A DNA stretch of 64,000 nucleotides, taken from positions 62,001 to 126,000 of IMG/VR virus record IMGVR_UViG_3300044632_001003; one strand, given 5' to 3'. Shown here piece after piece: positions 1-20,230 of this stretch. The position numbers were made by a program, and so were the translations under genes. Under the pieces are notes generated by a model. That model had not been told where the DNA came from. It ran no database searches and saw only the letters and a program-made list of their open reading frames with translations. Each line of letters opens with the position of its first letter. Position 1 is the first letter of the stretch.

Positions 1-15
1 CTTCGAACTGAGAGT

Positions 16-74
16 ATTGTAGCAGGTCAGCGGCGGGCAGCGGCTAGCAGCAGGTCCAGTAGGACAACTGCCAC
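16..74 (-). promoter_or_regulatory. early promoter cassette (degenerate palindrome + -10 TACAAT)
   Basis: GGTCCAGT-N6-ACTGCCAC at 53-74, 31 bp from -10 at 16-21. Confidence 0.55.
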
Positions 75-242
75 AACCGCCTTCCAAAAGCCCAGGGCGG
101 TGATTCCAAACCACCCCAGCACCAGCACCAGGAGCCACGCTTTCAGGGCAACGACGCCAGCGACGCCAACGATCAGGATACCTGCCAGAGCCACCATCTG
201 CGGGGTGCTGAGGTCCTCAATCCAGGGGTAACGCTTGCTCAT
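27..242 (-). CDS. small hydrophobic/membrane early protein
   Basis: 71-aa ORF with two hydrophobic stretches; promoter cassette directly upstream (264-322). Confidence 0.7.
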   Translation of the reverse strand: MSKRYPWIEDLSTPQMVALAGILIVGVAGVVALKAWLLVLVLGWFGITALGFWKAVVAVVLLDLLLAAARR

Positions 243-263
243 GGGTGCCTTGCGGTTGAGAGT

Positions 264-322
264 ATTGTAAGGGGTCAGCGGTGCCCTTTGGGGCAGGGAG
301 TGGACAGTGCCTCAGGTGTCCT
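264..322 (-). promoter_or_regulatory. early promoter cassette
   Basis: TGGACAGT-N6-GGTGTCCT 301-322; -10 TACAAT 264-269; 31-bp gap. Confidence 0.7.
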
Positions 323-470
323 CATCCTCCCCCAGAATGAACCCATCAACCCATCCTGCTGTGTATCCGTCATCTTTGGTGAACAGGCGGATCTTAAGAA
401 GTTTGGCGATTGCAAAGGGCAAACCGATCACCAGGGCTCCAGGGATGAGAATGGCAAGCAGTTCGGTCAT
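312..470 (-). CDS. 52-aa membrane-anchored early protein (MTELLAILIPG...), below ORF-track cutoff
   Basis: hand translation; promoter 493-551 upstream; stop codon lies inside the 301-322 palindrome. Confidence 0.65.
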   Translation of the reverse strand: MTELLAILIPGALVIGLPFAIAKLLKIRLFTKDDGYTAGWVDGFILGEDEDT

Positions 471-492
471 GGGGTTCCTTTGAACTGAGAGT

Positions 493-551
493 ATTGTAGC
501 GGGTCAGCGGGCGATCAGGTCGCCTGCAGTGTACAGTGCCTGAGCTGTCAC
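493..551 (-). promoter_or_regulatory. early promoter cassette
   Basis: TGTACAGT-N6-GCTGTCAC 530-551; -10 TACAAT 493-498; 31-bp gap. Confidence 0.7.
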
Positions 552-671
552 ATGGCGGACGGGGCGAATCGGTTCCCATAGTATCCAGAGCAGCAGAGCG
601 GCAACGGTCAGGCGAAGCATGGTAGCACGGTGGAACTCAGGGGAACGGGAACGGGTCAGGGAGCGGATCAT
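504..671 (-). CDS. small hypothetical protein (probable start MIRSLT)
   Basis: 3' part of track ORF 504..758; ATG at 671 overlaps the TGA of the upstream ORF. Confidence 0.55.
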   Translation of the reverse strand: MIRSLTRSRSPEFHRATMLRLTVAALLLWILWEPIRPVRHVTAQALYTAGDLIAR

Positions 672-811
672 GCGATGTGAGCAGGGGAACCACAGGAACG
701 GTAGAATTCTACCATACGTTCCGCCTCTGCCAGGGTGGGGAACCATTGCGACCGCCACTCACAGTGGTTGTAGGGGACCTGGTAGCGGACTTCGTAGCGG
801 GTCAGTGCCAT
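668..811 (-). CDS. 47-aa hypothetical protein (MALTRYEVRYQVPYNHCEWRSQWF...)
   Basis: hand translation; resembles small early ORFs I recall from cyanomyophages. Confidence 0.65.
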   Translation of the reverse strand: MALTRYEVRYQVPYNHCEWRSQWFPTLAEAERMVEFYRSCGSPAHIA

Positions 812-905
812 GGGTCAGTTGAAAGACTTTGGGGTGGCGGGTCCGTGACCTCCCGCCTACGGGGTCAAGGGGTCTGTGGGGTTGCCCCCGCCGTTCCTCC
901 CCTTG
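812..905 (-). ncRNA. candidate structured 5' leader RNA (GNRA hairpin + H-type pseudoknot)
   Basis: AAGGGG/CCCCTT stem enclosing GGGG-GCAA-CCCC; crossing stems TGACC/GGTCA and GGCGGG/CCCGCC. Confidence 0.35.
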
Positions 906-913
906 TTGAACAT

Positions 914-972
914 AGTATGGCACGGCAGAGGGGGCAGGTCTATGGGGTGTGTGCCACATTCTGAACTGTCAC
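914..972 (-). promoter_or_regulatory. early promoter cassette
   Basis: GTGCCACA-N6-ACTGTCAC 951-972; -35 TAGACC, 17 bp, -10 CATACT. Confidence 0.75.
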
Positions 973-1553
973 AGCACCTCTTTGCCGAACTTGCCACACA
1001 GGTAGAATGCCATTCCTTTATCTTTCAGGGTGCAACCTGCAAAGGTGAGAGGAACATAGGCGCCGTTAGTTTTAGATGCTTTGGTGCGAATTTGCAGCAG
1101 TCCGTTAGGACCAGTGATGGTGCTCAGTTGCTCACCAGCATTGAACTTAGCACGAATGGTATCACAAATGTGGTTGTAATCCTCCGCCAGTTCCTGATAG
1201 TGTTCGGGGTGAGTTTCAGGGTTCAGAACCTCAGTGCCCACATAATCGTTGGAGCGGGTGAAACCAACGTAGATGGTTTGAGAGAGTTTCTCACCGACTT
1301 TGCTGTCAGCGAAACTAACACTATCCTCCAGAATCTCAGAGAGGCAATGCTTCAGTTGGGTGACAGCGATAGACTCACCAACCGTGAAGGTCTTCAGTTC
1401 TCCATCCACCAGATCTTTCAGGTTGGAACTGTTAGGAATGCCCAGGGCAGTTTCAATCAGTTGCCCACGGGATCCTTTGTTCTTCCCAGGTTTGGCGAAC
1501 GCAGCGAAGTTAGTTACCTTCAGTTGGGCAGCGACTTGCAGGGTGTTGAGCAT
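969..1553 (-). CDS. mutH: MutH/Sau3AI-family endonuclease
   Basis: motifs NKGSRGQLIE..LG, D..DGELK, LQIRTKAS and AFYL parallel MutH (DKG..G..LE, D..ELK, LQIRPKAA, GFYL); start moved to ATG 1553 downstream of promoter 1576-1633. Confidence 0.7.
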   Translation of the reverse strand: MLNTLQVAAQLKVTNFAAFAKPGKNKGSRGQLIETALGIPNSSNLKDLVDGELKTFTVGESIAVTQLKHCLSEILEDSVSFADSKVGEKLSQTIYVGFTRSNDYVGTEVLNPETHPEHYQELAEDYNHICDTIRAKFNAGEQLSTITGPNGLLQIRTKASKTNGAYVPLTFAGCTLKDKGMAFYLCGKFGKEVL

Positions 1554-1575: not shown

Positions 1576-1633
1576 AGTATAGGGCACCAGGGGCACCCCA
1601 CAAGGGGGTCTGTGCCACTTCAACGATTGGCAC
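1576..1633 (-). promoter_or_regulatory. early promoter cassette
   Basis: GTGCCACT-N6-ATTGGCAC 1612-1633; -35 TTGTGG; -10 TATACT. Confidence 0.75.
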
Positions 1634-2519
1634 ACTGGAAGCGACCGCTGTTGAAGTTAGCGTTAGAAAAGACCTCACGATTCACCAGTTTGAACATACC
1701 AAACTGATTCACCAGAACGTAACCCTCAGCGTCGATTCTGTTACCGTACAGATAAGCAGCAGGACCATCATTGCGGCAGAGGAACAGGCAGTCATCTTTG
1801 ATAGACTTCACCAATGCCCACAGACGCAGCAGGTTAGCATCACAATCAAAGTCCTCAGGATTCACCTCTTCACCAGCACGAATGCAGGCATTGATCTGTT
1901 GTTTGATCTTTGCCGCTTCCTTCTCACTCACAAAGGTGGCAGTTTGTGCCATCTGACGGGCGAACTTGCACACCTCTTCAACATCAGCGAACGACTCCTG
2001 ATTGTGCAGGATGTATGCATTCGGTTTCACGAACTTCACCGTTTCGGTATCAGTCCAGATGCTACGGTCAGGGAATGCCTGGGCGTCACGAAGATCGCTC
2101 TCAGCATAATAGCAAGTGTGCGGGGCGATGATAATTTTCTGGGAAACTACCTCACCGAACTTATACGTGATGGTGTTAGGATTGTATTCGGTATCACCAC
2201 CGAACCCAATGAAATCACCCTGATAGATGGTTTCGAAACGCGGCAGATAATCGAAGCAAGCGTGAAGAATGTCTGCTACGTTGCCTTCGTAGTGTTGATC
2301 AATGTCCTCATGATTGTGAGCAATACGAATCTTCTTTTTGTTGAACACTGCCTTGGTTCCTACAAAGAACTCACCGCAAGCAGGGTCAATCCCCCACACG
2401 ATGGCAGGGGCACCGTCGATCTTGACGCTCAGGGCACCAGGGGTCACGAACCAGTCCAGGACGCTCAGGTCGCCCGTGAGGATGGTATCTTCGGGGTGCT
2501 CTTGGTGCTTGTTCTGCAT
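1620..2519 (-). CDS. ligase-like nucleotidyltransferase (KxDG), DUF6267-like
   Basis: SVKIDGAP (motif I), YQGDF (III), AEGYVLV (IV), MFKLVN (V). Confidence 0.6.
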   Translation of the reverse strand: MQNKHQEHPEDTILTGDLSVLDWFVTPGALSVKIDGAPAIVWGIDPACGEFFVGTKAVFNKKKIRIAHNHEDIDQHYEGNVADILHACFDYLPRFETIYQGDFIGFGGDTEYNPNTITYKFGEVVSQKIIIAPHTCYYAESDLRDAQAFPDRSIWTDTETVKFVKPNAYILHNQESFADVEEVCKFARQMAQTATFVSEKEAAKIKQQINACIRAGEEVNPEDFDCDANLLRLWALVKSIKDDCLFLCRNDGPAAYLYGNRIDAEGYVLVNQFGMFKLVNREVFSNANFNSGRFQCANR

Positions 2520-2540
2520 CGGTTCTCTGTTGATGGAATC

Positions 2541-2599
2541 AGTATGGCACGAACCAGGGGGGACCGCAACCCCCCCTGTGCCACTTGTTCAACTGTCAC
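2541..2599 (-). promoter_or_regulatory. early promoter cassette
   Basis: GTGCCACT-N6-ACTGTCAC 2578-2599; -35 TTGCGG inside a G6/C6 hairpin, 17 bp, -10 CATACT. Confidence 0.8.
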
Positions 2600-2792
2600 C
2601 CAGGAGGTCTGGATCCAGCAGGTCGGGATAGTAAGACTCAACCTCTGAAATCAGTTCCTCATCAGTATAACTGGTGAGATTTTCTTCCATCTGGTCACCA
2701 ACAATCTGCAGCAAATCTTTGGTGCTCATGTTATCAAGCAAACGGTCGATGTATGCTTCAACCAGTGCTTCACGATCGAAAGTGTCAGTCAT
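2589..2792 (-). CDS. small acidic hypothetical protein
   Basis: 67-aa track ORF, D/E-rich. Confidence 0.75.
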   Translation of the reverse strand: MTDTFDREALVEAYIDRLLDNMSTKDLLQIVGDQMEENLTSYTDEELISEVESYYPDLLDPDLLGDS

Positions 2793-2796
2793 GGTT

Positions 2797-2994
2797 TCAG
2801 TTCAGAACGTGACGATAATCAATGGATTTGATGCACCAACCAGATGCACAAGTGATCTCTTCAACTAAATCATCTTCATCATCTGCCTCCCAGATTTGAC
2901 CAATGTATTCTGCATTTAGAAGGTCTTTGTCATAAGCAGTCATCTCATCATCGTCATCAGTATCAAACTCAATGTAGAGGATTTGGAACTGCAT
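2797..2994 (-). CDS. small acidic hypothetical protein
   Basis: 65-aa track ORF with DTDDDDE and EADDEDD runs. Confidence 0.75.
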   Translation of the reverse strand: MQFQILYIEFDTDDDDEMTAYDKDLLNAEYIGQIWEADDEDDLVEEITCASGWCIKSIDYRHVLN

Positions 2995-3119
2995 CAGTAA
3001 TCGTAGTTAGAGTTCAGATACTCATTGACATCGAACTTTTCATCTTTGAGTTCAGGAATGTCAAGGTCAAAGATCTCACCAGGAGCATCTTGAATCTCAG
3101 ACCAGAGTTCATCAAACAT
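2994..3119 (-). CDS. 41-aa acidic micro-protein (MFDELWSEIQDAPGEIFDLDIPELKDEKFDVNEYLNSNYDY)
   Basis: hand translation; directly behind promoter 3144-3202. Confidence 0.7.
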   Translation of the reverse strand: MFDELWSEIQDAPGEIFDLDIPELKDEKFDVNEYLNSNYDY

Positions 3120-3143
3120 GGCGTGTCTCTCAGGGACGAATGT

Positions 3144-3202
3144 AATGTATCAGGGTCTGGGGGGCATTGCAACCCCCCTTGTGACACTTACTCAACTGTC
3201 AC
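3144..3202 (-). promoter_or_regulatory. early promoter cassette
   Basis: GTGACACT-N6-ACTGTCAC 3181-3202; -35 TTGCAA, 17 bp, -10 TACATT. Confidence 0.8.
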
Positions 3203-3346
3203 ACTCACCTCTTTGATGTTAAGACCCATCAACTGGTTTGTGACACGATTGCAGACAACTTCGGTGGGGTTCTTTACTCTGGACTTCTCATACCAGAAGG
3301 TAACGCAACCATCGTAAGTTTCGACCCGAACTTTAACTTCAGTCAC
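3188..3346 (-). CDS. 52-aa hypothetical protein (GTG start, MTEVKVRVETYDG...)
   Basis: hand translation; behind promoter 3370-3427; stop codon inside the next palindrome. Confidence 0.6.
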   Translation of the reverse strand: MTEVKVRVETYDGCVTFWYEKSRVKNPTEVVCNRVTNQLMGLNIKEVSVTVE

Positions 3347-3369
3347 GGTTGAATCTCAGGAACGAATGT

Positions 3370-6962: not shown

Positions 6963-7499
6963 TTAGAAACCATAGAATGATTGTGAGATAAAGAAATTAT
7001 AAGTCAATCGACCATCTGTAATATCATTACCATAAGGTGATGTAGGAGCATGAACATAATACCCAGGATAGGCAATCAATCGATTATACTTATGAGCATA
7101 CGATACTATCTCATTCTTCTCTCCATTGACAATTGATGTGCCACAGGATTCTGGTGCATCAGACAAATAGATGACCCCTGCATAAGGCACAGGATCAGCA
7201 TGATACTTGTAATGATGATAATCTTTGATTCTTGTGTTTCTATCGCTTTGGATATCCCAGTCGATAACCTCAGTGGGAAGAATATGAAAATAAGACTCAA
7301 TCAGATAATTCTGAATCTTGAAATGCTCCGATACAGTATGAAGAACATTCTCTTGTATTTCAGGACAATACAATGGACCCGTGCGGTATCCTTGCCATCC
7401 AGAATCAATATCCTTAGAGCAGTTATAATTCTGCTCCAAGGACATCTCTATGACTTCTTCTGGATTCTCAAAGAAGTCATCAATAACAAGTACGTTCAT
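6963..7499 (-). CDS. 2OG-Fe(II) oxygenase-like protein (DUF6445-like)
   Basis: VIDDFF N-terminus, HAD..YAGVIYL, NRLIAY...H, RLTYNFF. Confidence 0.75.
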   Translation of the reverse strand: MNVLVIDDFFENPEEVIEMSLEQNYNCSKDIDSGWQGYRTGPLYCPEIQENVLHTVSEHFKIQNYLIESYFHILPTEVIDWDIQSDRNTRIKDYHHYKYHADPVPYAGVIYLSDAPESCGTSIVNGEKNEIVSYAHKYNRLIAYPGYYVHAPTSPYGNDITDGRLTYNFFISQSFYGF

Positions 7500-10293: not shown

Positions 10294-10944
10294 TTACCTC
10301 AGTGAAAGTGGTGCAGTTCGTGTCGTAATATCTCCCAGAATCATTGCATTAAAACTGATTGTAATACGATTCTTACCCTTACCATAGGATGTATATGTTT
10401 GGGGAACACCATGGGGAAGATAAGATGGGAATATCAACAACGTACCCTCTTCAAATTTAGGAATGAATACACCTGAGTTCGTTGCATTTAATTCATTGTG
10501 ATTGGGTTCAAAGATTCGTGCTCCTGGGCGTGGATCGGAAAATGCAGTTCCTGAACAACTTGGAGGCATTGAAACGTGCAAAACACCACTCAGCAATGAA
10601 TTGGGGTGAATATGATTCTGATGCGAATATTCAGGGCGATAACCTACGTTTGCCCACATACTTGTAAGATAGGATTCATCACGAATGACCGTCATATAAT
10701 CCATGACGGATACTGCTTCCTGAAGAAAAAGGTCGGCAAGTTCTTCAAACTGAGGTAGATTATGCAGGTTGTGATTGCTATGCCAACCAACAGTTCCTGC
10801 TTTATTCCCCATAGTTTCATCTTTGGTCAGTTTCATGACATCAGATGCAACCTGGTTCAACAAACTTTTACTCTCAATCTTTGAGGAAAAGACCATTGAT
10901 GGGAATGTTGGCCAAATTGTGCGATCAATTAGTTTGATACTCAT
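10294..10944 (-). CDS. 2OG-Fe(II) oxygenase, TIGR02466-like
   Basis: WANV...HQNHIHPNSLLSGV, GTLLIFPSYLPHGV, RITISFN. Confidence 0.85.
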   Translation of the reverse strand: MSIKLIDRTIWPTFPSMVFSSKIESKSLLNQVASDVMKLTKDETMGNKAGTVGWHSNHNLHNLPQFEELADLFLQEAVSVMDYMTVIRDESYLTSMWANVGYRPEYSHQNHIHPNSLLSGVLHVSMPPSCSGTAFSDPRPGARIFEPNHNELNATNSGVFIPKFEEGTLLIFPSYLPHGVPQTYTSYGKGKNRITISFNAMILGDITTRTAPLSLR

Positions 10945-12481: not shown

Positions 12482-12540
12482 ATTATAGGGCAGAGTCAGG
12501 GCAGAGTCAGGGCAGAGTATGCCAGTTCATCAAGTGGACC
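12482..12540 (-). promoter_or_regulatory. early promoter cassette whose spacer is an 11-bp tandem repeat x3
   Basis: ATGCCAGT-N6-AGTGGACC 12519-12540; GGGCAGAGTCA x3; -10 TATAAT. Confidence 0.7.
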
Positions 12541-14152
12541 CTCTGTGAATGTTTTGTCTCAAATAGTCATACATTGACTGGCATTGTGATGCATAGGACT
12601 GATAGTGTTTTTGACAACCAGTAAAAACATCTGATAGGTAATCCAAATATGCATCACAATCTAATCCTTTTAACTTACCCATTGCCAAATGTAGATGTGC
12701 ATCCACAGGAGAATAATCCATACCTGCAGCAATACATTGAAATCCTGCCCCTGGTTGATATTCCCCAAACTTGTATCGGGCATTTGCAGTGAACATAAAC
12801 TCACTGGTTGCAACAATATCCCCAACCTTACTTTGCATGGATAAAGTATCTGCTATTGTTGAATTAACATCTGCAGAGATTCTACATCTCTCAGTAATAT
12901 CCATCCAATAGTCAGAGTCATGTCTTGGACTGATTGCATAATGCAATGCTACAAATTGTGCTAATTGATAGTAGGTCTGACTCATTGAAAAATTATAAGC
13001 ATCTCTATCCCACTGATTAACAATCCTATTTCTGCGGAGAGTATGGGCAAGAGGAAGAAGGAATTCATATGTTGTTAGCAATCCTGTGCTTTCCAGTGGT
13101 TCAATAAATCCAGCAGCAAGACCAATACCAATCACATTCTTTTTCCAAATCTGATTATGCAAACCCAACTTCATATCAATTGGTCTATATTCCAATTCTT
13201 CAGGATCAACACGATGAGTGTGCTTAATGTGATTCTTGAATTCTTTCAGAGCATCTTCTGAAGAAATGTACTTATCACTATAGACATATCCACCACCAAT
13301 GCGAGACCACAAAGGAATATTCCATACCCAACCATTTGTCAGAGCAGTGCAGTTTGTAAATGGCTCTAATTGTTTCTTTTTATCTTTATATGGAATATGT
13401 GTCGCCCATGCTTTATTGTTTGGAATGATGTGAGAAATCGAATTGAACTTCTCTTCAAGAGCGCCACCCAAGAGCATACTCTTAAATCCTGTACAATCAA
13501 TGAACAAGTCTGCGGTAATTGTTGATCCATCTTTGAGTTTAAGATAATCAACTCCGTTCTCATTTGTAACTACACCATCTACAGTTGAATGAATCAACTT
13601 GACTCCTCTAGGGAGACAAACTGCAGTCTTCAAGTATTGTCCAAATGCTGTTGCATCAAAATGATAAGCAGCATCAAAGTTAAAATTAAATCCTGGAGTC
13701 TTTCCAGTACCATCTGTTGATATTTTTCTTTGTTCAGCAACAGCAGTGATTGGATAAAAACAACGGGCATATGAGTTCTTATCCAGAACATCAGGTCTTA
13801 GTTGTTTAACTAAGTACCAATCATTTCTACTCAGTTGTTCATGAGGAACCGTAGACATCCCAAATGGATAGTGAAAGGAACCAGTCCCCTTTCCTTCAAA
13901 ATCAGTAAATTTAATGCTTAATTTGTATATTCCATCAGTTTTATGCAAGAAATCTCTATCATTCAATCCAAGCAAAGAAGTCCAGTGCTTAATACCACCC
14001 AAGGTGCTTTCACCCACACCAAGAATAGCAAAGTCTGGACTTTCGATGACAGTTAGATCAATTTCAGGAATTTGAGTTGCAATGGTGGCAGCAGACATCC
14101 ATCCTGCCGAACCACCACCGACAACCACAATCTTTTTTATTTCTTTACTCAT
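12530..14152 (-). CDS. flavin-dependent tryptophan halogenase family protein (PrnA/RebH-like)
   Basis: VVGGGSAGW, GVGEST, YKLSIKF (catalytic Lys), FIDCTGF, GWVWNIP, FIEPLESTG. Confidence 0.92.
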   Translation of the reverse strand: MSKEIKKIVVVGGGSAGWMSAATIATQIPEIDLTVIESPDFAILGVGESTLGGIKHWTSLLGLNDRDFLHKTDGIYKLSIKFTDFEGKGTGSFHYPFGMSTVPHEQLSRNDWYLVKQLRPDVLDKNSYARCFYPITAVAEQRKISTDGTGKTPGFNFNFDAAYHFDATAFGQYLKTAVCLPRGVKLIHSTVDGVVTNENGVDYLKLKDGSTITADLFIDCTGFKSMLLGGALEEKFNSISHIIPNNKAWATHIPYKDKKKQLEPFTNCTALTNGWVWNIPLWSRIGGGYVYSDKYISSEDALKEFKNHIKHTHRVDPEELEYRPIDMKLGLHNQIWKKNVIGIGLAAGFIEPLESTGLLTTYEFLLPLAHTLRRNRIVNQWDRDAYNFSMSQTYYQLAQFVALHYAISPRHDSDYWMDITERCRISADVNSTIADTLSMQSKVGDIVATSEFMFTANARYKFGEYQPGAGFQCIAAGMDYSPVDAHLHLAMGKLKGLDCDAYLDYLSDVFTGCQKHYQSYASQCQSMYDYLRQNIHRGST

Positions 14153-17483: not shown

Positions 17484-18293
17484 TTAGTATAATGCCTCTA
17501 GCAGCGGATTCTGGGGTTCCTGTGCCACTTCCTCAACTGGCATAGCATCCTCTATGCGTTGCTTAGCAATCTCATAATATTCTTGTTCAAATTCCATCCC
17601 AATAAACTTTCGATTTAATTTAACTGCAGCAACACCAGTAGAACCAGAACCCATACAGTTATCAAGAACAATCTCACCTTCATTAGAATACGTTTTGATT
17701 AACCATTCCATTAGTGGAACAGGTTTCTGTGTGGGATGCACCTGTTGTTGAGCACTAAAGTCTCTGGAGATATTAAGAACAGACTTGGGATATCTTACAC
17801 CTTCATTACTGAAGGATTTACGTGGTTTCATACCATAACCATGGTCATTCTTGCGACCAACGTATCCCTCTGGATTCTTACTTGTTCTTGAGTACGGTTC
17901 TCCTTTTTCCATCTGTGGGTTGTACGTACCACCTGTTTCCCTGTAAAAAATTAGAACGTTCTCGTGAGTCTTCATTGGTCTGTACTTGGCAAGTCCAGGC
18001 GATCCACATTTGTTCTTGTTCCATACTAATTCGTACCTGAACCATTCTAGTTTTGAGCAGATAAGTTGTGCTGAAAAGGGTTGAGAACCAAATAGACATA
18101 TCACACCTTTAGGTTTGATGATACGCCCATATTGCTGCCACATTTGGTTAAAATCTAAAACTTCATCCCACTTGATGGAAGTAGTCCCATAAGGTGGGTC
18201 GCAGCAGATGAAATCAATAGAATTGTCTGGAATCTCTTTCATGAGTTCCAGACAGTCACCTAGTTGTAAGTCAAAGGGCATCATAACCTTCAT
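17484..18293 (-). CDS. beta-class N6A/N4C DNA methyltransferase
   Basis: CDPPYG near N-terminus; HPTQKPV; VLDNCMGSGSTG near C-terminus. Confidence 0.92.
   Translation of the reverse strand: MKVMMPFDLQLGDCLELMKEIPDNSIDFICCDPPYGTTSIKWDEVLDFNQMWQQYGRIIKPKGVICLFGSQPFSAQLICSKLEWFRYELVWNKNKCGSPGLAKYRPMKTHENVLIFYRETGGTYNPQMEKGEPYSRTSKNPEGYVGRKNDHGYGMKPRKSFSNEGVRYPKSVLNISRDFSAQQQVHPTQKPVPLMEWLIKTYSNEGEIVLDNCMGSGSTGVAAVKLNRKFIGMEFEQEYYEIAKQRIEDAMPVEEVAQEPQNPLLEALY
17486..17543 (-). promoter_or_regulatory. early promoter cassette embedded in the MTase 3' end
   Basis: GTGCCACT-TCCTCA-ACTGGCAT 17522-17543; 30 bp to TATACT. Confidence 0.75.
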
Positions 18294-18894: not shown

Positions 18895-18952
18895 ATTATA
18901 CGTCTTTTTCTGTCTCTTGGATATCTTCTTGTACCACTTCCTCAACTGGCAC
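18895..18952 (-). promoter_or_regulatory. early promoter cassette embedded in the 3' end of 18896..19387
   Basis: GTACCACT-TCCTCA-ACTGGCAC 18931-18952; 30 bp to TATAAT. Confidence 0.75.
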
Positions 18953-19387
18953 ATCAACCTTGGAACTTCTCAAGGTTTTTGGCTTAGTGTATTCGACTGG
19001 AACAAAAGGTTGTTCAGGATCTTTTGTTGCTCTAATAGATGGACTAGAAGTAAATTTCTTGGTCTTTTTTGGTTGTTTTAAAAGTTTGTGGCGGAACAAT
19101 GTTTGACCAGGATTAAGCTCCTTAGGTGGTTCTGGATCTGGTTCAAATTGTTTTAAATATGTCTTTTTACTGAAGAGAAGATTCTTTTCAATTGCTTCTT
19201 CAGGAGTTGCAGGTAAATCTTCTTCTACAATTGATGATTGTTTCTGAATTTCTTCATAAACATCAACATGTGGAACATCTTCTGTCTTTTCTTCAACAGG
19301 AGCACATACAACTTCTGGTTCTGGTTGAACTACACTCTCTGGTTGTTTTTGAGATTCAGAAGAAACAAGATCAGAAAATCTTCCCAT
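18896..19387 (-). CDS. low-complexity E/P/K-rich hypothetical protein
   Basis: 163-aa track ORF. Confidence 0.7.
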   Translation of the reverse strand: MGRFSDLVSSESQKQPESVVQPEPEVVCAPVEEKTEDVPHVDVYEEIQKQSSIVEEDLPATPEEAIEKNLLFSKKTYLKQFEPDPEPPKELNPGQTLFRHKLLKQPKKTKKFTSSPSIRATKDPEQPFVPVEYTKPKTLRSSKVDVPVEEVVQEDIQETEKDV

Positions 19388-19402: not shown

Positions 19403-20230
19403 CTATTTATTATTCCAAACAGCAATTAGTTCATTTGCTTTCTTCCTACTAGAACCCTTGGCAGAAATGGTCCTAGTCACCTGAATTGGATAGATTTTAG
19501 CATTATTATAAAGTTCTCTTGCAACAGGAACATCGTGATTAGAAATAATGACGGTAATTCCTTTGTTTGCAAGTTGTTCTGCCAAATCTCTCAACTCAAC
19601 TTGCTGTGCATCAGTAAATCCATCCGTGGCATAATCTGTAAAGGATGCAGTTTCCGAAGCTGGAATGTATGGTGGGTCAAAATATACAGTATCACCTGCT
19701 TCTAAGTCCTCATAAAGTGACGGATCTTCAAAAGATAATGAAGTGAATCGTGTAAGTTTTTTAGTGAGGAAGAACATTCTAAAGTTCATCATCTCTTCCG
19801 ATGGGCAAGATGGTTTATCATACTTACCAAAGGGAACATTAAATTCACCTTTCTTATTATATCTCGACAGTCCATTGAAGCAGTGACGGTTCAGGTAAAT
19901 GAACAGTCGTGCCCTCTCTATAGTGTTTGTTGCCTGGTTAAAGTGCTTCCGCAACTCTAGATATGCTTCCTTAGTATTATTTTCTGGAATGAATAACTCT
20001 TCGCAATATTTGATGAAGTTATCATCCCCAGGATGAACCAAATTCTGGTAGATTGCCACCAAATCTTTATTCACATCATTCAAAATGTATTGCTCTGCTG
20101 GTGTGTTAAGGGCAACAGCAAGACTACCACCAAAGGGTTCGCAATAACGCTTTGGATATCCAATATGGGGAATAAGATGGGGCAGGACCCGTGTTTTGTT
20201 TCCTGCCCACTTCAAGAAAGTTTTGTTCAT
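19403..20230 (-). CDS. dam: Dam-family DNA adenine methyltransferase
   Basis: FLKWAGNK, YCEPFGGS, FNGLSRYNKKGEFNVPFG, VYFDPPY, ISNHD. Confidence 0.95.
   Translation of the reverse strand: MNKTFLKWAGNKTRVLPHLIPHIGYPKRYCEPFGGSLAVALNTPAEQYILNDVNKDLVAIYQNLVHPGDDNFIKYCEELFIPENNTKEAYLELRKHFNQATNTIERARLFIYLNRHCFNGLSRYNKKGEFNVPFGKYDKPSCPSEEMMNFRMFFLTKKLTRFTSLSFEDPSLYEDLEAGDTVYFDPPYIPASETASFTDYATDGFTDAQQVELRDLAEQLANKGITVIISNHDVPVARELYNNAKIYPIQVTRTISAKGSSRKKANELIAVWNNK

What the first reader, a model, noticed from the sequence alone, without database searches (positions are those of the whole stretch)
969..1553. Stand-alone MutH-like endonuclease expressed early in a phage that also carries Dam
Seen: the MutH catalytic and GATC-contact motifs appear retained (K..G..E, D..ELK, LQIRxKA, FYL including the Tyr equivalent of the methyl-sensing Y212), and a Dam gene lies at 19403..20230. 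Established: MutH nicks the unmethylated strand at GATC, cyanobacteria use MutS/MutL without MutH, and many methylate GATC. Inference: either a phage-added methyl-directed repair arm, a nicker of hemimethylated host replication forks, or a weapon against unmethylated co-infecting DNA.
Basis: partly seen in the sequence, partly recalled or inferred. Interest (0 to 1): 0.65.

Follow-up and report, generated by a model that had tools for sequence, protein, structure and literature searches.

The report
Phage GATC nuclease paired with Dam
A freshwater cyanophage carries a small MutH-shaped DNA-cutting enzyme that always travels with the phage's own GATC methylase, and it most likely serves to cut unmethylated (host or rival) DNA, because the host group has neither the methylase nor the MutL partner that mismatch repair would need.

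Summary
The ORF is real: window 969-1553, minus strand, 194 aa. It is a single-domain MutH/Sau3AI-fold nuclease (VIA Z 12.2 to E. coli MutH, 11.4 to the Sau3AI N-domain). The MutH catalytic residues and the Tyr212 equivalent align. It is not a MutH equivalog: it scores 35 bits against a cut-off of 243, and the residues of the MutL-released latch are replaced.

Comparative genomics points away from repair:
- MutL was found in 0 of 201 genomes of the host family, and neither MutL nor MutS in the phage.
- Dam-class methylases were found in 0 of 5 candidate hosts and are rare in the family.
- All 25 isolate cyanophage records with this gene also carry the Dam ortholog, usually directly upstream, and once read through as a fusion.
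- The other 39 Dam-carrying cyanophage records hold a different PD-(D/E)XK nuclease in the same slot, so by the counts no Dam lacks a nuclease (25 + 39 = 64).
- Bacterial relatives usually sit beside adenine methylases, in restriction-modification layout.

Best reading: the nuclease half of a phage-borne, restriction-modification-like GATC module, aimed at unmethylated host or rival-phage DNA. No activity was tested. Early expression is unverified.

The parts
969..1553 (-). 194-aa single-domain MutH/Sau3AI-fold PD-(D/E)XK nuclease. Proposed active site: E34, D47, E52, K54, K89. Proposed GATC and methyl-reading positions: R156, K158, Y184.
1576..1603 (-). Promoter-like boxes in the 66-nt spacer upstream of the ORF: TTGTGG (1603-1598), a 16-nt spacer, then TATACT (1581-1576), ending 22 nt before the ATG. 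It matches 8 of 12 consensus positions, below the scan's threshold. A -10-like box stands at the same distance in most relatives.
   Evidence: sequence reading; not shown to be functional
19403..20230 (-). Dam-family (D12 class) N6-adenine DNA methyltransferase, the proposed protective partner of the nuclease. It lies 18 kb away here and is adjacent in many related phages.
17484..18293 (-). Second adenine/N4 methyltransferase (Pfam N6_N4_Mtase), 1.1 kb from Dam. It may be a second methylase of the module, as in the two-methylase bacterial cassettes L184-L189. Its specificity is unknown.
   Evidence: its membership in the module is an inference

Best explanation
The ORF encodes a small, MutL-independent endonuclease of the MutH/Sau3AI fold. 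It most likely recognises GATC and is blocked by N6-methyladenine at that site. It works as the nuclease half of a restriction-modification-like pair whose methylase half is the phage's Dam.

Phage DNA has 496 GATC sites and is depleted to 0.54 of expectation. It would be kept methylated and so spared. DNA without Dam methylation would be nicked or cut in the infected cell. The obvious substrates are the host chromosome (no Dam; about 10 GATC per kb in WH7803) and any co-infecting phage without Dam. The outcome would be host shut-off, nucleotide salvage or exclusion of rivals.

Shown here: the fold, the conserved residues, the gene linkage, and the failure to find MutL, or in most genomes Dam, in the searched hosts.
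Inferred: GATC specificity, methyl sensitivity, independence from an activator, and the biological target.
For: Fold and residues:
- The AF2 model has pLDDT 76 and pTM 0.75.
- Its top PDB matches are MutH (Z 12.2, 177 aa, 24% identity) and the Sau3AI N-domain (Z 11.4).
- Positions E56, D70, E77, K79, K116, R184, K186 and Y212 of E. coli MutH are conserved by alignment and across the family.

Activation:
- The MutH residues of the MutL-released latch (K66, E68, H112, H115; bioRxiv 10.64898/2026.04.21.719898) are N44, K46, K85 and E88 here.
- MutL was found in 0 of 5 candidate hosts and 0 of 201 genomes of their family, with controls positive.
- The phage has no MutL or MutS.

Host methylation:
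- D12 methylase was found in 0 of 5 candidate hosts. Only about 13 of 201 family genomes have a strong full-length hit.

Linkage with Dam:
- All 25 isolate records with the gene also have the Dam ortholog.
- So do the window's own genome and 5 of 5 large IMG/VR contigs.
- Dam lies directly upstream in S-RIM8, S-IOM18, WH25-B, S-RS29, S-H25, QB2, S-M1 and KBS-M-1A (coordinates).
- Dam lies directly downstream in L037, L060, L062 and L063.
- In S-8S29 the Dam stop codon is lost and the two genes read as one 492-aa ORF.

Nuclease swap:
- The 39 Dam-carrying cyanophage records without this gene (S-RIM50, S-RIM12, ACG-2014b, ACG-2014g) hold a 144-aa PDDEXK_11 nuclease in the same slot between Dam and the helicase gene.
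- 25 + 39 = 64, which is all the cyanophage Dam records.

Bacterial relatives:
- 11 of 15 sampled loci have an adjacent adenine methylase.
- Seven of these are cassettes where a D12 methylase lies directly next to the nuclease (a 15-nt gap, convergent, in L185). Six of the seven also carry an N6_N4 methylase.
Against: - No biochemical test was possible. Specificity and methyl sensitivity rest on aligned residues at 26% identity.
- In this phage the two genes are 18 kb apart (32 kb in S-CAM7), so the adjacency expected of an R-M operon is not met here.
- MutH proper is a weak, latent nickase that prefers hemimethylated sites. If this enzyme kept that preference it would nick newly made phage DNA.
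- The homodimer prediction gave no verdict.
- Two metatranscriptomes have contigs over neighbouring genes but none over this ORF.
- Some bacterial relatives have no methylase nearby (L088, L183).
- The hosts of this freshwater phage are not identified. Other methylase classes acting on GATC were not excluded.
Confidence: 0.55

Rival explanations
1. Phage-added methyl-directed mismatch repair. The protein would nick the unmethylated nascent strand at hemimethylated GATC in phage DNA, on a signal from host MutS, and so raise replication fidelity.
For: The MutH fold and the Tyr212 equivalent are retained. Dam is present in the same genome. Candidate hosts have MutS (5 of 5). Some databases already name homologues 'MutH'.
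Against: MutL, the obligatory coupler and activator, was not found in 0 of 201 host-family genomes or in the phage. The latch residues that MutL releases are not conserved. The protein is far below the MutH equivalog cut-off (35 against 243 bits). A different nuclease (PDDEXK_11) fills the same slot in sister phages. Bacterial relatives sit in R-M layouts.
Confidence: 0.06
2. A nickase acting on hemimethylated GATC at replication forks. It would either stall host replication or create 3' ends in phage DNA that prime recombination-dependent replication, as T4-like phages use.
For: MutH prefers hemimethylated sites and nicks one strand (PMC3848065). The protein is single-domain and gave no dimer signal (no verdict). 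Newly replicated phage DNA would be transiently hemimethylated (inference).
Against: The hosts lack Dam, so host forks are unmethylated rather than hemimethylated. Nothing in the data points to a replication role. The strict dependence on Dam and the interchange with another nuclease fit protection from self-cutting better.
Confidence: 0.12
3. A selfish element. The Dam-nuclease pair would persist as an addictive or homing-like cassette that spreads in mixed infections by cutting genomes that lack it, with no benefit to phage growth in single infection.
For: The gene has a patchy distribution and a variable position (adjacent, or 1 to 32 kb away). Here the nuclease ORF has atypical GC (49.6% against 38% for the genome) and lies at the edge of a GC-rich island. 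Nucleases are swapped in one slot. R-M systems are known selfish elements (general knowledge).
Against: This overlaps the best explanation mechanistically, since both cut unmethylated GATC, so it is a rival only about who benefits. The protein is strongly conserved (74 to 100% identity over 80 viral loci; 790 homologues), which argues for sustained selection.
Confidence: 0.15
4. A PD-(D/E)XK nuclease with another specificity, or no sequence specificity, unrelated to GATC methylation. The Dam association would be only synteny in a variable early region.
For: Identity to MutH is only about 26%. Pfam's MutH model does not hit it. Specificity cannot be read reliably from an alignment.
Against: R184, K186 and Y212 equivalents and the LQIRxKA and AFY motifs are conserved. 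The 25 + 39 = 64 partition with Dam, the read-through fusion and the Dam-adjacent bacterial cassettes are hard to explain by chance synteny.
Confidence: 0.1

Closest known systems
E. coli / H. influenzae MutH (methyl-directed mismatch repair endonuclease; PDB 2azo, 2aor)
   Same: It has the same fold over nearly the whole length (Z 12.2, 177 aa). The catalytic E/D/E-x-K plus K116 positions, LQIRxKA and the Tyr212 position are conserved.
   Different: It is 35 aa shorter, lacking N-terminal segments and the last 7 residues. It scores 35 bits against the 243-bit equivalog cut-off. The MutL-latch residues are replaced. No MutL was found in the host family or the phage. It is genetically tied to a methylase and not to a repair system. 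In a quick tree it lies far from E. coli MutH (low certainty).
Sau3AI (type II GATC restriction enzyme; PDB 4pxg)
   Same: The catalytic N-domain has the same fold (Z 11.4, 164 aa). It belongs to an R-M system that targets GATC.
   Different: Sau3AI has two MutH-like domains (about 490 aa) and is activated in cis by the second domain. This protein has one domain. It has no NCBIfam Sau3AI hit itself; 9 of 78 relatives hit weakly. It keeps the MutH-type tyrosine.
DpnII-type GATC cassette (two methylases plus one nuclease)
   Same: The bacterial relatives in L184-L189 have an N6_N4 methylase, a D12 Dam-family methylase and a nuclease in one cassette. The window also has both methylase classes 1.1 kb apart. 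The phage Dam hits DpnM (2dpm) at E 5e-48.
   Different: Here the nuclease has a MutH fold. Whether R.DpnII belongs to another family is my own knowledge and was not tested. In the window the nuclease is 18 kb from the methylases.
Virus-encoded GATC R-M systems of giant viruses (PBCV-1 CviAI; melbournevirus mel_015/mel_016; PMC7253447)
   Same: A lytic virus carries both a GATC adenine methylase and a GATC nuclease, and its own genome is protected by methylation.
   Different: Those are eukaryotic viruses. No similarity to CviAI was detected: the BFVD fold search returned only the S-CAM7 homologue and one 503-aa viral protein. In melbournevirus the host DNA was not degraded.
T4 strategy of modified phage DNA plus nucleases that attack unmodified host DNA
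   Same: The logic is the same: the phage marks its own DNA and attacks unmarked DNA. PMC7824862 states this principle for phages in general.
   Different: The mark here would be GATC methylation, not hydroxymethylcytosine. The T4 details are my own knowledge and were not tested here.

Membership tests
MutH (NCBIfam NF003458 / TIGR02248 equivalog) | Whole-protein score above the curated cut-off | tested here: not met
   It scores 35.3 bits against 243, and 22.1 against 229.9. None of 78 relatives reaches the cut-off; the best E-value is 1e-17. Pfam PF02976 does not hit P0001.
MutH (NCBIfam NF003458 / TIGR02248 equivalog) | MutH-type PD-(D/E)XK fold | tested here: met
   Foldseek E 3e-6 and probability 1.00. 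VIA Z 12.2, rmsd 3.8, 177 aa.
MutH (NCBIfam NF003458 / TIGR02248 equivalog) | Catalytic residues E56, D70, E77, K79 and K116 | tested here: met
   They align to E34, D47, E52, K54 and K89. D47, K54 and K89 are invariant, E34 is nearly invariant, and E52 is E or D in relatives.
MutH (NCBIfam NF003458 / TIGR02248 equivalog) | Methyl-sensing Tyr212 | tested here: met
   Y184 aligns with Y212. AFY is nearly invariant in the 18 closest relatives. The role of Tyr212 is taken from PMC3848065. The function itself was not tested.
MutH (NCBIfam NF003458 / TIGR02248 equivalog) | Latency released by MutL (inhibitory loop K66/E68 held by H112/H115; a MutL partner present) | tested here: not met
   The residues are N44, K46, K85 and E88. 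MutL domains were found in 0 of 5 and 0 of 201 host-family genomes and not in the phage.
MutH (NCBIfam NF003458 / TIGR02248 equivalog) | Works on a Dam-methylated cellular chromosome | tested here: not met
   D12 methylase was found in 0 of 5 candidate hosts and about 13 of 201 in the family. PMC4390886 agrees.
Sau3AI family type II restriction endonuclease | Two tandem MutH-like domains (catalytic plus effector), about 490 aa | tested here: not met
   The protein has 194 aa and one domain.
Sau3AI family type II restriction endonuclease | Fold of the catalytic N-domain | tested here: met
   4pxg_A gives Z 11.4 over 164 aa at 15% identity.
Type II restriction-modification module | A cognate methylase always present with the nuclease | tested here: met
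   All 25 isolate records, the window's own genome and 5 of 5 large viral contigs have it.
Type II restriction-modification module | R and M genes adjacent | tested here: inconclusive
   They are 18 kb apart in the window. They are adjacent in S-RIM8, S-IOM18, WH25-B and others, in L037 and L060-L063, and in bacterial loci L184-L190, L092 and L093. They are fused in S-8S29.
Type II restriction-modification module | The nuclease cuts the unmethylated site and is blocked by the cognate methylation | not testable with these tools
   This needs cleavage assays on unmethylated, hemimethylated and fully methylated GATC.
Free-standing homing endonuclease | Sporadic gene next to its own target site, absent from sister genomes | tested here: inconclusive
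   The distribution is patchy and the position varies. No target site was identified, and the tie to Dam is not a homing feature.

The most novel reading that the evidence does not exclude
In T4-like cyanophages the Dam methylase would never be a solitary anti-restriction device. It would be one half of an offensive restriction-modification pair whose nuclease half is interchangeable, either the MutH-like protein or a PDDEXK_11 protein. GATC methylation would be the self-mark that lets these phages, which have no modified bases of the T4 kind, destroy the Dam-free picocyanobacterial chromosome and rival phages while sparing their own DNA.
Probability: 0.35. Interest if true: 0.8.

Novelty: new variant of a known kind. 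Interest (0 to 1): 0.62.

Why it matters
Cyanomyoviruses are among the most abundant viruses of the main aquatic primary producers. They are thought to recycle host nucleotides. In the papers searched here I found no account of how a phage with ordinary bases tells its own DNA from host DNA.

A Dam-plus-nuclease pair gives a concrete and easily tested answer for the Dam-carrying lineages. It recasts 'orphan' phage Dam genes as partners of nucleases. It also defines a large, mostly unnamed family of about 200-aa single-domain MutH-fold nucleases: 267 cluster representatives, most of those sampled lying next to adenine methylases. Such enzymes could be useful as small methyl-sensitive GATC nickases or cutters.

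The result also corrects automatic 'mismatch repair protein MutH' labels now spreading in phage and metagenome records.

Tried and rejected
- Sequence searches of the PDB, with the single protein and with a 25-sequence profile, found nothing relevant. The link to MutH needed NCBIfam, hhalign and fold comparison.
- Megablast of 6 kb of the window against isolate phages found no match.
- The pattern scan of 185,579 species genomes for close relatives found none. Alignments A2 and A3 were too divergent for that tool.
- PADLOC found no defence-system model for this protein or four relatives.
- The homodimer prediction (complex prediction, 2 copies) gave no verdict, with a score of 0.00. It is not evidence either way.
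- Two metatranscriptome runs hold contigs over neighbouring genes (window 1609-3350), mostly from relatives at 90 to 95% identity. They hold nothing over 1073-1608. Contigs cannot show absence, so this gives no evidence on expression or timing.
- The sigma-70 scan did not list a promoter before the ORF. The boxes I report match 8 of 12 positions and were found by eye and by comparison.
- Paper searches found no description of a cyanophage MutH-like gene or of a Dam-nuclease pairing. The library is partial.
- The ORF downstream of Dam in the window (18896-19387) is not related to the PDDEXK_11 protein. PF20472 was not found in the window's genome, but that search had no positive control.
- The careful ML tree did not finish, so only a quick tree is reported.
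- I used the large profile search once, because the family scans left the protein open at 35 bits against a 243-bit cut-off.

Full report
**1. What is there**

Window 969-1553 (minus strand) is an intact ORF of 194 aa.
- Its stop codon is followed by a 59% GC stretch.
- Its start is preceded by a 66-nt spacer after a DUF6267 gene at 1620-2519.
- The window lies at 62,001-126,000 of a 205,009-bp virus record that is 96% complete by CheckV and has 38% GC.
- DNA runs holding the stretch are freshwater and lake metagenomes.
- The nearest isolate is Synechococcus phage S-CAM7 (Kyanoviridae), at 68% protein identity.

**2. Is it MutH-like?**

Yes in fold and motifs.
- Pfam's MutH model misses it; only MvaI_BcnI appears, at E 0.08.
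- PHROG 15364 is 'unknown function'.
- NCBIfam's MutH equivalog aligns end to end (residues 20-194 against 37-217 of 223) at E 6e-9.
- hhalign to E. coli MutH gives E 3e-6.
- An AlphaFold2 model from 25 homologues (pLDDT 76, pTM 0.75) has MutH as its best PDB match: Foldseek E 3e-6 and TM 0.56-0.59, VIA Z 12.2 over 177 residues at 24% identity.
- Next come the catalytic N-domain of Sau3AI (Z 11.4) and, far behind, MvaI at Z 5.7.

The aligned residues are as follows.
- K26/G27/G30/E34 correspond to K48/G49/G52/E56.
- D47, E52 and K54 correspond to D70, E77 and K79.
- K89 corresponds to K116.
- R156 and K158 correspond to R184 and K186, within LQIRxKA.
- Y184 corresponds to Y212, the residue reported to read the methylation state (PMC3848065).
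- These positions are invariant or nearly so in 78 relatives down to about 25% identity.

**3. Is it a MutH?**

No.
- It scores 35 bits where the curated cut-off is 243.
- An exhaustive profile search found 267 cluster representatives. They are mostly 190-240 aa, and none of the 78 full-length ones scanned reaches the MutH cut-off.
- In a quick tree the cyanophage clade is nested in this radiation, and E. coli MutH sits on a long branch elsewhere (low certainty).
- A 2026 cryo-EM preprint describes how MutL wakes MutH. An inhibitory loop (K66, E68) is held by H112 and H115 and is released when MutL binds helix 147-167. The phage protein has N44, K46, K85 and E88 at those four positions.
- From this I infer, without proof, that it is not latent in the MutL-dependent way.

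**4. The cellular context removes the repair reading**

I obtained host-type genomes through the phage's psbA gene. They are Synechococcus WH7803, RCC307, MIT S9507, a Chesapeake Bay MAG and a Cyanobium MAG.

| Search | Result |
|---|---|
| MutL domains PF01119 and PF08676, five candidate hosts | 0 of 5 |
| MutL domain PF01119, genomes of their family | 0 of 201 |
| MutS, five candidate hosts | 5 of 5 |
| MutL and MutS in the phage | not found |
| D12 (Dam-class) methylase, five candidate hosts | 0 of 5 |
| D12 methylase, strong full-length hits in the family | about 13 of 201, several in MAGs with many copies |
| MutH-like family, family genomes | 0 of 201 |

- In the MutL searches the controls, including Synechococcus elongatus and E. 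coli, were positive.
- PMC5101192 reports mutH absent from 76 cyanobacteria.
- A 400-kb sample of WH7803 has 9.9 GATC per kb (observed/expected 1.01), or about 23,000 sites per chromosome. The phage has 2.4 per kb, at 0.54 of expectation.

**5. The gene is tied to Dam**

The ORF at 19403-20230 is a Dam-family methylase.
- TIGR00571 scores above its cut-off.
- E. coli Dam gives E 4e-67, DpnM 5e-48 and T4 Dam 6e-21. All three are GATC enzymes.

Among isolate phages:
- The MutH-like gene occurs in 25 records, all Synechococcus myoviruses. Every one has the Dam ortholog.
- In S-RIM8, S-IOM18, WH25-B, S-RS29, S-H25, QB2, S-M1 and KBS-M-1A, Dam ends 70-90 nt before the nuclease gene.
- In S-8S29 the Dam stop TGA is TCG, and the 69-nt spacer reads in frame, giving one 492-aa ORF.
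- In S-CAM7 the genes are 32 kb apart, and in the window 18 kb apart.

Among IMG/VR loci:
- The order nuclease-then-Dam occurs with gaps of 33-92 nt in L037, L060, L062 and L063. Other loci have the pair 1-4 kb apart.
- All 5 large contigs with the nuclease also have a D12 methylase.

**6. A second nuclease fills the same slot**

- The Dam ortholog is found in 64 cyanophage records: 48 named 'Synechococcus phage' and 16 named 'Cyanophage'.
- The 39 without the MutH-like gene are S-RIM50, S-RIM12, ACG-2014b and ACG-2014g.
- They carry a 144-aa protein that matches Pfam PDDEXK_11 above its cut-off (E 1e-11). In the two regions read (S-RIM50, ACG-2014b) it sits directly after Dam and upstream of the same helicase gene; the tblastn coordinates place it just after Dam in the others.
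- The counts close exactly: 25 + 39 = 64, with 25 + 23 'Synechococcus' and 16 'Cyanophage'.
- So by the counts, in this collection no cyanophage Dam of this type is without a PD-(D/E)XK nuclease, and no nuclease is without Dam.
- This dependence, together with a swappable nuclease, is what one expects of a methylase that protects against its partner nuclease.

**7. Bacterial relatives are in R-M layouts**

- A profile search of 401 Cyanobacteriota-phylum genomes found 13 with family members.
- In seven loci the roughly 205-aa ORF lies directly next to a Dam-family methylase (a 15-nt gap, convergent, in L185). Six of these also have an N6_N4 methylase upstream. This two-methylase cassette recalls DpnII.
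- Of 15 bacterial and metagenomic loci sampled, 11 have an adjacent adenine methylase.
- Two others lie beside type I HsdR-like or DndB-like genes.
- The window also has an N6_N4 methylase (17484-18293) 1.1 kb from Dam.

**8. Mechanism proposed**

The protein would be a GATC endonuclease blocked by adenine methylation, working without MutL and protected against by phage Dam. In an infected Dam-free cell it would cut or nick the host chromosome about every 100 bp, and any unmethylated co-infecting genome.

Precedents are the GATC R-M pairs of chloroviruses and marseilleviruses (PMC7253447) and the general phage strategy of modifying its own DNA in order to attack host DNA (PMC7824862).

- Shown: fold, residues, linkage, and the failure to find MutL (and, in most genomes, a Dam-class methylase) in the searched host genomes.
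- Inferred: specificity, methyl sensitivity, lack of latency, and the target.
- Open: whether it nicks or cuts, since a dimer prediction gave no verdict; how hemimethylated, newly replicated phage DNA escapes; and when the gene is expressed.

**9. 'Early' expression**

- The spacer holds TTGTGG-N16-TATACT ending 22 nt before the ATG. This matches 8 of 12 positions, below the scan's threshold.
- Many relatives have a clearer TTGACC/TTGACG -35 box and a -10-like box at the same distance.
- This fits a host-sigma-factor promoter but proves nothing.
- Metatranscriptome contigs cover the neighbours but not this ORF.

**10. Novelty**

- The 'MutH' label already exists as automatic annotation, in JGI names and in the GenBank record of WH25-B. 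The resemblance itself is therefore not new.
- What I did not find in the papers searched is the dependence on Dam, the interchangeable nuclease slot, the R-M context of the wider family, and the absence of MutL and Dam in the hosts.
- I rate it a new variant of a known kind: a virus-borne R-M-like module with a single-domain MutH-fold nuclease.

Noticed in passing
whole phage genome (G000), including the window: CCGG does not occur once in 205,009 bp, where about 142 are expected. GGCC is at 0.29, AGCT at 0.43 and GCGC at 0.50 of expectation. A 400-kb sample of Synechococcus WH7803 shows no CCGG depletion, at 0.95. This suggests strong selection by CCGG-cutting host restriction.
   Followed up: partly
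window 1-1000 (genome 59,001-63,000): This is a 4-kb island of 56-62% GC in a 38% GC genome whose upstream flank is 27-33% GC. It is packed with small ORFs on the minus strand, some of them hydrophobic. It has six copies of TACAATACTCTCA, a -10-like box, three of them within GCTGACC..TACAAT. The MutH-like ORF (49.6% GC) and the DUF6267 ORF (49.9%) lie at its edge, while Dam is 38.8% GC. It looks like a recent acquisition from a GC-rich source.
   Followed up: partly
window 1620-2519 (-): The 299-aa DUF6267 protein (E 4e-78) lies directly upstream of the nuclease gene. Read by eye, it contains 'VKIDGAP', which resembles the KxDG motif I of ligases and nucleotidyltransferases. A PDB sequence search found nothing.
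   Followed up: partly
L086:3388-3822 (S-RIM50) and L087:3397-3831 (ACG-2014b): A 144-aa PDDEXK_11 nuclease occupies the slot after Dam in all 39 Dam-carrying cyanophage records that lack the MutH-like gene.
   Followed up: yes
L002:3107-4585 (Synechococcus phage S-8S29): Dam and the MutH-like gene form one 492-aa ORF, because the Dam stop TGA reads TCG and the 69-nt spacer is in frame. This is a single record, so a sequencing error is not excluded.
   Followed up: partly
genomes G001-G005 and 201 genomes of their family: Picocyanobacteria of the WH7803 family have MutS (two hits each in 5 of 5 genomes), but no MutL domain was found in 0 of 201, with positive controls. How MutS works there without MutL is an open question in its own right.
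   Followed up: partly
window 12530-14152 (-): A 540-aa tryptophan-halogenase-family flavoenzyme (Pfam E 9e-103) is encoded by the phage.
   Followed up: no
window 10294-10944 (-) and 6963-7499 (-): These ORFs encode a 2OG-Fe(II) oxygenase domain protein and a DUF6445 protein. They are ordinary cyanophage accessory genes.
   Followed up: no
P0133 (400 aa) and P0251 (412 aa): These family members carry about 200-aa C-terminal extensions of unknown nature. A 503-aa viral protein in BFVD (A0A8F8X6W8) also matches the fold at 26% identity.
   Followed up: no
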